A stretch of 63,969 bases of DNA, counting the filler, from Neoconidiobolus thromboides FSU 785 (Eukaryota; Fungi; Entomophthoromycota), in the NCBI GenBank assembly GCA_025603075.1. It is 10 parts of 10 records of this genome, joined end to end, with 100 filler letters (N's around TTAATTAATTAA, not from the genome) between each part and the next. Parts side by side here need not be neighbours in the genome. Positions count along the whole stretch, not along the records: positions 19,020 to 31,402 come from MU626633.1; 9 more parts are not named here. One strand, 5' to 3'. Both the position numbers and the translations under genes were made by a program. Of the stretch, positions 25,778 to 26,041 are shown in pieces (position 1 is the stretch's first letter; the number at the start of each line of letters is the position of its first letter). The notes below the pieces were generated by a model. That model saw nothing but the letters and a program-made list of their open reading frames with translations. It searched no databases and was not told the DNA's origin.

Positions 25778-26041
25778 ATGTATACTCATCTCATTGGAAC
25801 TTTATTTACTATTTTAACTATCAATAACTTTGTTGTTATTGCTGCACCAGCTATTCCTAACGATTCTATTCAAGGAGCAGTAACACTAAATAAAGAAAAC
25901 GAATCTCTACAATCTTTTGAAAGAAGAGGAGCCTATAGACCATATGGCAGAAGAGGACTTGACGCACCACTTCAAAGAAGAGGAGCCTATAGACCATATG
26001 GCAGAAGAGGACTTGATGCACCACTTCAAAGAAGAGGATAG
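25778..26041 (+). CDS. Secreted Kex2-type repeat peptide precursor P3 (87 aa)
   Basis: Signal peptide; SFE-RR-[GAYRPYG-RR-GLDAPLQ-RR]x2-G*. Confidence 0.9.
   Translation: MYTHLIGTLFTILTINNFVVIAAPAIPNDSIQGAVTLNKENESLQSFERRGAYRPYGRRGLDAPLQRRGAYRPYGRRGLDAPLQRRG
25921..26038 (+). repeat. 54-nt coding tandem repeat (2.2 copies) in P3
   Basis: Units 25921-25974 and 25975-26028 differ by one synonymous base (GAC/GAT). Confidence 0.95.

What the first reader, a model, noticed from the sequence alone, without database searches (positions are those of the whole stretch)
25921..26041. GAYRPY-G-RR: a duplicated amidation-type signal in a fungal precursor
Seen: a 54-nt unit recently duplicated (one synonymous difference) encodes GAYRPYG-RR-GLDAPLQ-RR. 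The P1 pro-region also ends FVG-RR, and P2 keeps RPYG but has lost the first Arg (G-ER). Known: X-Gly-basic-basic is the peptidylglycine alpha-amidating monooxygenase (PAM) signal of animal neuropeptides, and PAM is not a standard fungal enzyme. Inference: either neuropeptide mimicry (GAYRPY-NH2 made by an unrecognised fungal amidase or in the host), or Gly is simply part of the peptide.
Basis: partly seen in the sequence, partly recalled or inferred. Interest (0 to 1): 0.78.

Follow-up and report, generated by a model that had tools for sequence, protein, structure and literature searches.

The report
Fungal Kex2-type repeat peptide precursor family
The duplicated GAYRPYG-RR unit is real, but it sits in one of six small secreted peptide-precursor genes of the insect-pathogenic fungus Neoconidiobolus thromboides that look like ordinary Kex2-processed repeat proteins, and comparison of the gene copies suggests the glycine is part of the peptide, not an amidation signal.

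Summary
Window 25921-25974 and 25975-26028 are 53/54 identical, and the one difference is synonymous (GAC/GAT). They lie in an 87-codon ORF (25778-26041, +). This ORF has a hydrophobic leader, a pro-region, and then GAYRPYG and GLDAPLQ twice each, every unit bounded by RR.

The piece comes from Neoconidiobolus thromboides FSU 785 (Entomophthorales). The ORF belongs to a species-restricted family of six genes. P1-P3 are in the window, P4 and P5 are on an overlapping contig, and P1b is on a third contig. The five promoters compared share a TATA box. [quoted passage not shown]

The amidation reading is not supported:
- Gly precedes only 5 of 14 dibasic sites but follows 11 of 13.
- The conserved core is R-x-Y-G. 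That Gly also persists where WR-stop, ER or a stop codon follows.
- Gly is replaced by Ser or Asn in other units.
- A review states that PAM is missing throughout fungi.
- No RPY-amide neuropeptide family turned up.

The likeliest mechanism is signal cleavage, kexin cleavage after RR, removal of the basic pair, and secretion of linear heptapeptides of unknown target. NCBI's spliced model of this gene uses a frame the paralogues do not conserve. I rate it a new member of a known kind, of modest interest.

The parts
25778..26041 (+). P3 gene: unspliced 87-codon ORF for a prepropeptide (KEP-type) with five RR sites
   Evidence: This frame is open in all six paralogues; the alternative frame is not.
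25778..25852 (+). Predicted ER signal peptide (about residues 1-25; hydrophobic core, then A-P-A). The cleavage point is inferred, not predicted by a dedicated tool.
   Evidence: Mean Kyte-Doolittle 1.97 for residues 5-23 against -1.21 for the rest. This is the best conserved part of the family.
25853..25927 (+). Pro-region ending in SFE-RR, with N-x-S sequons at residues 28 and 41
   Evidence: It is conserved with P4 and P2 at the protein level.
25921..25974 (+).
25975..26028 (+). 54-nt repeat copy 2, 53/54 identical; the difference is synonymous
26039..26059 (+). TAG stop followed by an in-frame relic (G-N-V-Y-G-stop) of the ancestral last unit. It is homologous to the C-terminal units of P1, P2, P4 and P5.
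   Evidence: Sequence; 3' alignment
25730..25741 (+). TATA box (GTATATAAATAC), about 40-50 nt upstream of the ATG, shared by the five family members compared
   Evidence: repeat family D9
26125..26130 (+). AATAAA in a 3' segment conserved with P2 and P1b (likely poly(A) signal)
   Evidence: (D13)
25880..25928 (+). 49-nt 'intron' of the NCBI model K502DRAFT_353484. It shifts the frame to an acidic repeat, and comparison with the paralogues rejects it.
   Evidence: The donor GT is absent at the same place in P4, where the stretch is annotated as coding.
21966..22223 (+). P2 paralogue, 85 aa (KR-NWRPYG-ER-DFEALLK-RR-GSSRTYS-RR-SIGEAYRFR)
   Evidence: P0003 is identical
20373..20579 (+). P1 paralogue, 68 aa (FVG-RR-GSGRIYN-IR-DVDRAYGWR)

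Best explanation
P3 is a small secreted prepropeptide gene of the Kex2-processed repeat protein (KEP) kind. It is one of a tandemly expanded family restricted to Neoconidiobolus thromboides. Shown here: six paralogous ORFs, a shared TATA-box promoter in the five compared, a hydrophobic leader, and a pro-region. The ancestral unit order is A-B-A, where A is G-x-x-R-P-Y-G and B is G-[LF]-x-x-P-L-x, each bounded by RR. In P3 a very recent 54-nt duplication turned this into A-B-A-B, and a nonsense codon cut off the old terminal unit. Inferred steps: the leader is removed in the ER. A kexin then cleaves after each RR in the Golgi, and a Kex1-type carboxypeptidase removes the RR. Two copies each of GAYRPYG (783 Da) and GLDAPLQ (713 Da) are secreted as linear, Gly-terminated heptapeptides. 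The Gly belongs to a conserved R-x-Y-G core and is not an amide donor. Whether the peptides signal between fungal cells (pheromone-like) or act on the host is unknown.
For: Organism. Family.

Frame: the ORF frame is open in all six genes, while the alternative frame has stops in P1, P1b and P4. The two A units of P4 differ at 4 nucleotides in 3 codons, all synonymous (GGT/GGC, GGT/GGA, AGA/CGC; sequence). The P3 duplicate differs by one synonymous change.

Gene signals: a conserved TATA box and a conserved 3' segment.

Leader: hydropathy 1.3-2.2 against -0.8 to -1.25 for the rest.

KEP criteria: after removing the leader and cutting at KR/RR, P3 gives 5 fragments of at least 2 aa carrying two repeated motifs. 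This meets the published pipeline criterion of at least four fragments (PMC6339444). KR and RR are the usual fungal Kex2 sites. Zoopagomycota have the most KEPs per strain (PMC7329392), and Conidiobolus coronatus has 11-19. The Atlas feature search puts a yeast alpha-factor precursor cluster second, at 0.81, which is only a weak lead.

Gly as part of the peptide: plus PAM absent from fungi.
Against: There is no expression, secretion or cleavage evidence. The exact 87-aa product is not on record in any assembly, and NCBI's own model of this gene is spliced into another frame. No dedicated signal-peptide predictor was available. Kexin and Kex1 genes of this species were not checked here. The paralogues diverge about equally at all three codon positions, so purifying selection is only visible locally. 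P1 and P5 have a single dibasic site and are not repeat proteins in the strict sense. P3 lost its ancestral last unit to a stop codon, which could signal decay.
Confidence: 0.7

Rival explanations
1. Amidation or neuropeptide mimicry: Gly-RR is a PAM-type signal, and GAYRPY-NH2 is made by an unrecognised fungal enzyme or by host PAM and acts on insect peptide receptors.
For: X-Gly-RR is present twice in P3, twice in P4 and once in P1. The fungus is an insect pathogen with a broad host range. P1b and the P3 relic end in Y-G-stop, which would also expose a C-terminal Gly.
Against: PAM is reported missing throughout fungi (PMC6529398). The B units end in Q or L before RR. Gly is kept before WR-stop and before ER, where it could never become C-terminal. 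It is replaced by S or N in sister units. Gly after the dibasic pair is far more regular (11/13) than Gly before it (5/14). No RPY-amide family was found in the paper library. The residues before RPY vary among paralogues (AY, SG, NW).
Confidence: 0.04
2. RiPP precursor: the repeats are core peptides that are further modified, for example Tyr cross-linked or oxidised, by clustered enzymes. Candidates are the P450 that lies 2 kb from P4 and is transcribed divergently, with the subtilase and aldo-keto reductase beside it.
For: The overlapping contig carries P5, an aldo-keto reductase, an S8 subtilase, a P450 and P4 within 10 kb. Ustiloxin-type RiPPs also come from KEPs with Tyr-containing cores. 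The A unit of P3 has two Tyr.
Against: No DUF3328/UstYa or tyrosinase gene appears among the called genes or long ORFs. The second aromatic residue is not conserved (GSG-RPYG in P4, the copy nearest the P450). There is no Y-x-I core. P1-P3 lie 10-16 kb from the P450. Co-location could not be tested in other species because the family has no relatives elsewhere.
Confidence: 0.08
3. The RR sites are not cleaved, or only partly cleaved. The product would then be a 37-residue, strongly cationic Arg/Gly/Pro/Tyr-rich peptide (pI about 11.7) acting as a whole, for example as an antimicrobial-like or nucleic-acid-binding peptide.
For: pI 11.65 for the region after the first RR. From my own knowledge, R-P-Y and P-R-P motifs recur in insect proline-rich antimicrobial peptides; this was not tested here.
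Against: The strict 7+2 periodicity with RR at every boundary, and the A-B-A order kept in P2, P3 and P4, fit processing sites. RR was lost only in the degenerate members.
Confidence: 0.1
4. The NCBI model is right: a 49-nt intron (25880-25928) is removed and P3 encodes an acidic repeat protein (EPIDHMAEEDL...) in the other frame.
For: Deposited model K502DRAFT_353484 (P0002). GT..AG boundaries exist. Frame 2 is open through the repeat in P3 and P2.
Against: Frame 2 carries stops in P1, P1b and P4. The 'intron' is conserved as coding sequence in P4, with about 1 difference in 45 nt and no GT donor. It is annotated as coding in the deposited models of P2 and P4. The one difference between the P3 copies is synonymous in frame 1 and Thr/Met in frame 2.
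Confidence: 0.05

Closest known systems
Fungal KEX2-processed repeat proteins (KEPs; Le Marquer et al. 2019, PMC6339444; Umemura 2020, PMC7329392)
   Same: Signal peptide, pro-region and short repeated motifs separated by RR/KR. Small size, lineage-specific sequence and local gene duplication. KEPs are abundant in Zoopagomycota.
   Different: Only two copies each of two alternating heptapeptides, fewer than most catalogued KEPs. Family members P1, P1b and P5 have degenerated to a single dibasic site. N. thromboides was in neither survey, and no RPYG motif appears in the supplementary text that is held.
Yeast alpha-factor precursors (MF-alpha1/2)
   Same: Prepro layout, N-glycosylation sequons in the pro-region, and repeats released by Kex2 and Kex1. 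The Atlas feature search lists an MF_alpha cluster second (score 0.81, a weak lead).
   Different: No Pfam MF_alpha or MF_alpha_N match. RR is used instead of KR. There is no conserved X-Ala/X-Pro Ste13 spacer: only P3 starts its A unit with G-A. The peptides are 7 aa rather than 13. No link to mating is known in this lineage.
Animal amidated neuropeptide precursors (PAM substrates)
   Same: Multi-copy short peptides bounded by dibasic sites. The A unit has Gly directly before RR.
   Different: The amidating enzyme is reported absent from fungi. Gly is not tied to the dibasic site across the paralogues. No sequence family match was found for an RPY-amide product.
Ustiloxin/phomopsin/victorin-type fungal RiPP precursors (dikaritins)
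   Same: KEP-type precursor with Tyr-containing short cores. Ustiloxin cores YAIG and YVIG also end in Gly.
   Different: No DUF3328 or tyrosinase neighbour, no Y-x-I core, and an early-diverging fungus rather than Dikarya.

Membership tests
KEX2-processed repeat proteins (KEPs) | N-terminal ER signal peptide | tested here: met
   A hydrophobic stretch at residues 5-23 (mean Kyte-Doolittle 1.3-2.2) is followed by small residues (A-P-A), and the rest is hydrophilic. This is a crude test only; no SignalP-type predictor was available.
KEX2-processed repeat proteins (KEPs) | At least four fragments of 2 aa or more after in-silico cleavage at KR/RR (pipeline of PMC6339444) | tested here: met
   P3 gives 5 such fragments plus a lone Gly. 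P4 and P2 give 4 each. P1, P1b and P5 give 2 and fail.
KEX2-processed repeat proteins (KEPs) | Fragments are repeats of identical or near-identical motifs | tested here: met
   P3 has GAYRPYG x2 and GLDAPLQ x2. P4 has GSGRPYG x2. P2 has only degenerate repeats.
KEX2-processed repeat proteins (KEPs) | Kexin (KEX2) and KEX1 present in the organism; actual cleavage and secretion | not tested
   The literature finds KEX2 absent from only a few of 250 surveyed fungal species, such as Microsporidia. It was not checked for this genome. The neighbouring S8 protease is a subtilisin with an I9 propeptide and no P domain, so it is not a kexin.
PAM-amidated peptide precursors | Peptide-Gly directly followed by a basic pair or a stop | tested here: met
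   This holds for the A units of P3 and P4 and for the P1 pro-region end. It does not hold for the B units (Q-RR, L-RR). Overall, 5 of 14 dibasic sites.
PAM-amidated peptide precursors | The Gly co-varies with the processing site across homologues, as expected if its role is amide donor | tested here: not met
   Y-G is kept before WR-stop (P1, P5) and before ER (P2). Gly is replaced by S before RR (P2) and by N before IR (P1).
PAM-amidated peptide precursors | PHM and PAL catalytic domains encoded by the producer | not testable with these tools
   No tool searches this genome for a family without a query sequence from the session. [quoted passage not shown]
PAM-amidated peptide precursors | The product resembles a known amidated peptide family of the host | tested here: inconclusive
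   A full-text search for RPYamide, PYamide and RPY-NH2 found no neuropeptide paper. No receptor or motif database was available.
Ustiloxin-type RiPP precursors (ust-RiPS, dikaritins) | DUF3328 (UstYa) gene near the precursor | tested here: not met
   The called genes and long ORFs of both contigs are an aldo-keto reductase, an S8 subtilase, a P450 and ribosomal L16 only. An intron-rich gene could have been missed.
Yeast alpha-factor family (Pfam MF_alpha, MF_alpha_N) | Match to the Pfam models | tested here: not met
   No Pfam family at E up to 1 for P1, P2 or P3.

The most novel reading that the evidence does not exclude
An entomophthoralean insect pathogen secretes Gly-extended heptapeptides that become C-terminally amidated (GAYRPY-NH2, GSGRPY-NH2), either by host PAM or by an unknown fungal activity, and act on insect peptide receptors. 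This would be a fungal mimic of animal neuropeptide biogenesis.
Probability: 0.03. Interest if true: 0.85.

Novelty: new member of a known kind. Interest (0 to 1): 0.27.

Why it matters
If the main reading holds, this is one more lineage-specific KEP family. Its uses are modest:
- It corrects two deposited gene models.
- It adds an uncatalogued peptide family in an aphid-pathogenic early-diverging fungus.
- It gives defined masses (about 783 and 713 Da) to look for in culture filtrates or infected insects.

Short secreted peptides of Entomophthorales are essentially unstudied, so a function in self-signalling or host interaction would be worth knowing. The sequence gives no reason to expect animal-type amidation.

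Tried and rejected
**Relatives and family membership**
- Pfam on P1-P3: no family.
- Word-based protein search: only two proteins, both from the same species.
- Profile HMMER of the five-member alignment against 1.84 billion representatives: only the species' own models, plus two spurious repeat proteins, P0005 and P0006.
- Metagenome contig scan with the alignment: 177 pattern matches, none confirmed.
- Protein Atlas: all scores below 0.9, so leads only.
- Exact-sequence look-up of the 87-aa product: not on record, so there is no independent gene call or transcript.

**Other checks**
- Literature: nothing for peptidylglycine with Entomophthor*, nothing useful on entomopathogen neuropeptide mimicry, and nothing for RPY-amide.
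- tRNA scan: none.
- Pairwise codon-position counts between paralogues were too saturated to give a frame or selection signal on their own.
- Period-27 homology between the A and B units (TRF 65-67%) rests mostly on the shared RR-G and Pro codons. I do not claim common descent of A and B.

**Steps not carried out**
- A search of the genome for PHM/PAL domains could not be run.
It was re-run from the session's files.

Full report
**1. The observation**

The piece (window 19020-31402) is AT-rich, 22-36% GC. At 25778-26041(+) there is an 87-codon ORF. TRF reports a 54-nt period with 2.2 copies and 98% matches at 25920-26038. Aligning 25921-25974 with 25975-26028 gives 53/54 identities. The single difference is GAC/GAT, both Asp, in the ORF frame.

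After a hydrophobic leader and a pro-region ending SFE-RR, the ORF encodes GAYRPYG, GLDAPLQ, GAYRPYG and GLDAPLQ. Each is followed by RR, and the ORF ends with one Gly and TAG.

**2. Where it comes from and what surrounds it**

The word-based protein search finds two proteins only. Both are hypothetical proteins of Neoconidiobolus thromboides FSU 785, an entomophthoralean fungus. The species is described as a pathogen with a broader host range (PMC9409958).

One hit, P0002, lies on a 12,383-base contig. That is exactly the length of this piece, so P0002 is the deposited model of this gene.

The other hit, P0001, lies on contig MU626627.1, fetched as L001. The last 1205 bases of L001 equal window 19020-20224 at 100% identity, running from the first base of the window's piece to the last base of that contig. 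The two contigs therefore dovetail and most probably describe one region of about 23 kb. Its order is:
- P5 (minus strand; L001 441-677)
- aldo-keto reductase
- S8 subtilase with an I9 propeptide
- cytochrome P450
- P4 (L001 10001-10234)
- dispersed short repeats
- P1, P2 and P3
- a mitochondrial-type ribosomal protein L16 gene (28824-29549)
- a second aldo-keto-reductase-like stretch

.

A sixth copy, P1b, opens a third contig (L002, MU626411.1). Its first 229 nt are identical to window 20335-20563. The sequences then diverge, and TGG becomes TAG, so P1b ends ...RAYG-stop.

**3. Which reading frame is real**

NCBI's model of P3 (P0002, K502DRAFT_353484) removes 25880-25928 as a 49-nt intron. 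It then continues in another frame, giving an acidic repeat. Comparison with the paralogues argues against this model on five counts:
- Frame 1 is open from ATG to stop in all six genes. Frame 2 has internal stops within the repeat region in P1, P1b and P4.
- The chance of an 87-codon open frame here is about 6e-4.
- The supposed intron is almost identical to the matching stretch of P4. That stretch has no GT donor and is annotated as coding.
- The deposited model of P2 (P0003) also uses frame 1.
- The two A units of P4 differ at four nucleotides in three codons, all synonymous in frame 1. The one difference between the P3 copies is synonymous in frame 1 and Thr/Met in frame 2.

The five genes compared share a TATA box about 45 nt upstream of the ATG, and most share a 3' segment containing AATAAA. 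No transcript evidence was available. The exact 87-aa product is not on record in any assembly.

**4. Anatomy of the family**

The leader is the best conserved part. Its hydropathy fits a signal peptide. The pro-regions of P3, P4 and P5 carry N-x-S sequons.

P2, P3 and P4 share the unit order A-B-A:
- A is G-x-x-R-P-Y-G.
- B is G/D-[LF]-x-x-[PL]-L-x.
- Each unit is bounded by RR or KR.

P3 became A-B-A-B through the 54-nt duplication.

The 3' alignment shows that the TAG of P3 (26039-26041) sits in the second codon of the ancestral last unit. The relic G-N-V-Y-G-stop (26042-26059) is still in frame. It is homologous to GIGKAYGWR-stop in P5...RAYGWR-stop in P1, GSGRPYGRR-stop in P4 and SIGEAYRFR-stop in P2. 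The final Gly of P3 is therefore the stump of a truncated unit.

**5. Is Gly-RR an amidation signal?**

Counting dibasic sites in the five distinct proteins gives:

| Position | Sites with Gly | Notes |
|---|---|---|
| Before the basic pair | 5 of 14 | Two of the five are the fresh P3 duplicate; four belong to the one homologous A unit |
| After the basic pair | 11 of 13 | |
| Background (non-basic post-signal residues) | 15% | |

The regular feature is an N-terminal Gly on each unit, not a C-terminal one.

Across homologous units the Y-G pair persists where it could never be exposed as a C-terminal Gly: G-WR-stop in P1 and P5, and G-ER in P2. It is replaced by S-RR and N-IR in other units. 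The B units end in Q or L.

[quoted passage not shown] Full-text searches found no RPY-amide peptide family. They also found no link between peptidylglycine monooxygenase and Entomophthorales.

Amidation by host enzymes cannot be excluded, but nothing here supports it.

**6. The most likely mechanism**

The layout meets the published operational definition of KEX2-processed repeat proteins. That definition asks for a signal peptide, at least four fragments after cutting at KR/RR, and repeated motifs (PMC6339444). RR is a usual fungal Kex2 site. Zoopagomycota have the most KEPs per strain (PMC7329392). Conidiobolus coronatus has 11-19, while N. thromboides was in neither survey.

The likely route has four inferred steps:
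1. Signal peptidase removes the leader.
2. A kexin cleaves after each RR.
3. A carboxypeptidase trims the RR.
4. Linear heptapeptides are secreted.

The G-A start of the P3 A unit could be trimmed by a Ste13-type dipeptidase. That feature is not shared by P4 (G-S), so I give it little weight.

The target of the peptides is unknown. Nothing here distinguishes self-signalling from action on the host.

**7. Rivals**

- RiPP route using the nearby P450. This is conceivable because ustiloxin-type RiPPs also derive from KEPs. There is no DUF3328 or tyrosinase neighbour, and the second aromatic residue of the A unit is not conserved.
- An uncleaved 37-residue cationic peptide, pI 11.7. This is possible but fits the strict 7+2 periodicity less well.
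- The spliced NCBI model, discussed in section 3.

**8. Novelty**

A profile search of 1.84 billion representative proteins and a metagenome scan find the family only in this species. It has no Pfam family. It is a new, lineage-restricted member of a well-known kind of fungal gene. The amidation or mimicry idea would be striking, but the paralogue comparison and the known absence of PAM in fungi count against it.

**9. Limits**

- There are no expression or peptide data.
- No dedicated signal-peptide predictor was available.
- Kexin, KEX1, STE13 and PHM/PAL were not searched in this genome.
- Small ORFs are often left unannotated, so the absence of relatives in protein libraries is weak evidence.

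Noticed in passing
window 25880-25928; L001 10232-10313: Two deposited gene models look wrong. K502DRAFT_353484 (P3) uses a frame-shifting 49-nt intron. K502DRAFT_368821 (P4) skips the plain TAG stop at L001 10232-10234 through a 3' intron and adds seven residues. The plain ORF ends ...GSGRPYG-RR-stop.
   Followed up: yes
window 19020-20224 = L001 10926-12130: The end of contig MU626627.1 and the start of the window's contig are 100% identical over 1205 nt, a dovetail. The assembly probably split one region at a dispersed repeat.
   Followed up: partly
window 19557-19670, 19729-19842, 20170-20297, 26149-26274, 27105-27212, 27310-27417, 27418-27507, 28140-28261, 30489-30587; also L001 about 280-400, 1150-1280, 9109-9330, 11460-11745; L002 about 525-629: A dispersed element of about 110 nt occurs in both orientations at 70-94% identity. 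It includes an inverted pair 94% complementary (27105-27212 / 27310-27417). It looks like a MITE or another short non-autonomous repeat. One copy lies just downstream of P3, and contig ends fall in it.
   Followed up: partly
L002 1-330 (contig MU626411.1): A sixth family member, P1b, has its promoter and first 229 nt identical to P1. Downstream it is about 75% identical, and TGG has become TAG, so the product ends in Y-G. This points to recent gene conversion, duplication or an assembly branch point. It is followed by a sugar-transporter gene instead of P2.
   Followed up: partly
window 25692-25722: A 7-nt microsatellite (ATCAGAC, 4.4 copies) lies immediately upstream of the P3 TATA box. It is absent from the other four promoters compared (P1, P2, P4, P5).
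   Followed up: no
window 25778-26041 and paralogues: Gly follows the dibasic pair at 11 of 13 sites, so nearly every predicted peptide starts with Gly. This is a much stronger regularity than Gly before the pair, and it is unexplained. It could be a kexin P1' preference or a requirement of the peptides.
   Followed up: partly
window 28824-29549 (+): An intron-less 241-aa ORF matches Pfam Ribosomal_L16 (E 1.4e-41) and has an N-terminal extension. It is probably the nuclear gene for mitochondrial ribosomal protein L16.
   Followed up: partly
window 29924-30361 (-): A stretch is 30% identical at the protein level (73% at the DNA level over 250 nt) to the aldo-keto reductase of L001 3242-4135. 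It is a second AKR gene or a fragment of one.
   Followed up: no
L001 4414-5913 (-), 6488-7999 (-): A secreted-type S8 subtilase (I9 propeptide, no P domain) and a cytochrome P450 sit between P5 and P4. They may be coincidental neighbours or part of a peptide-related cluster.
   Followed up: partly
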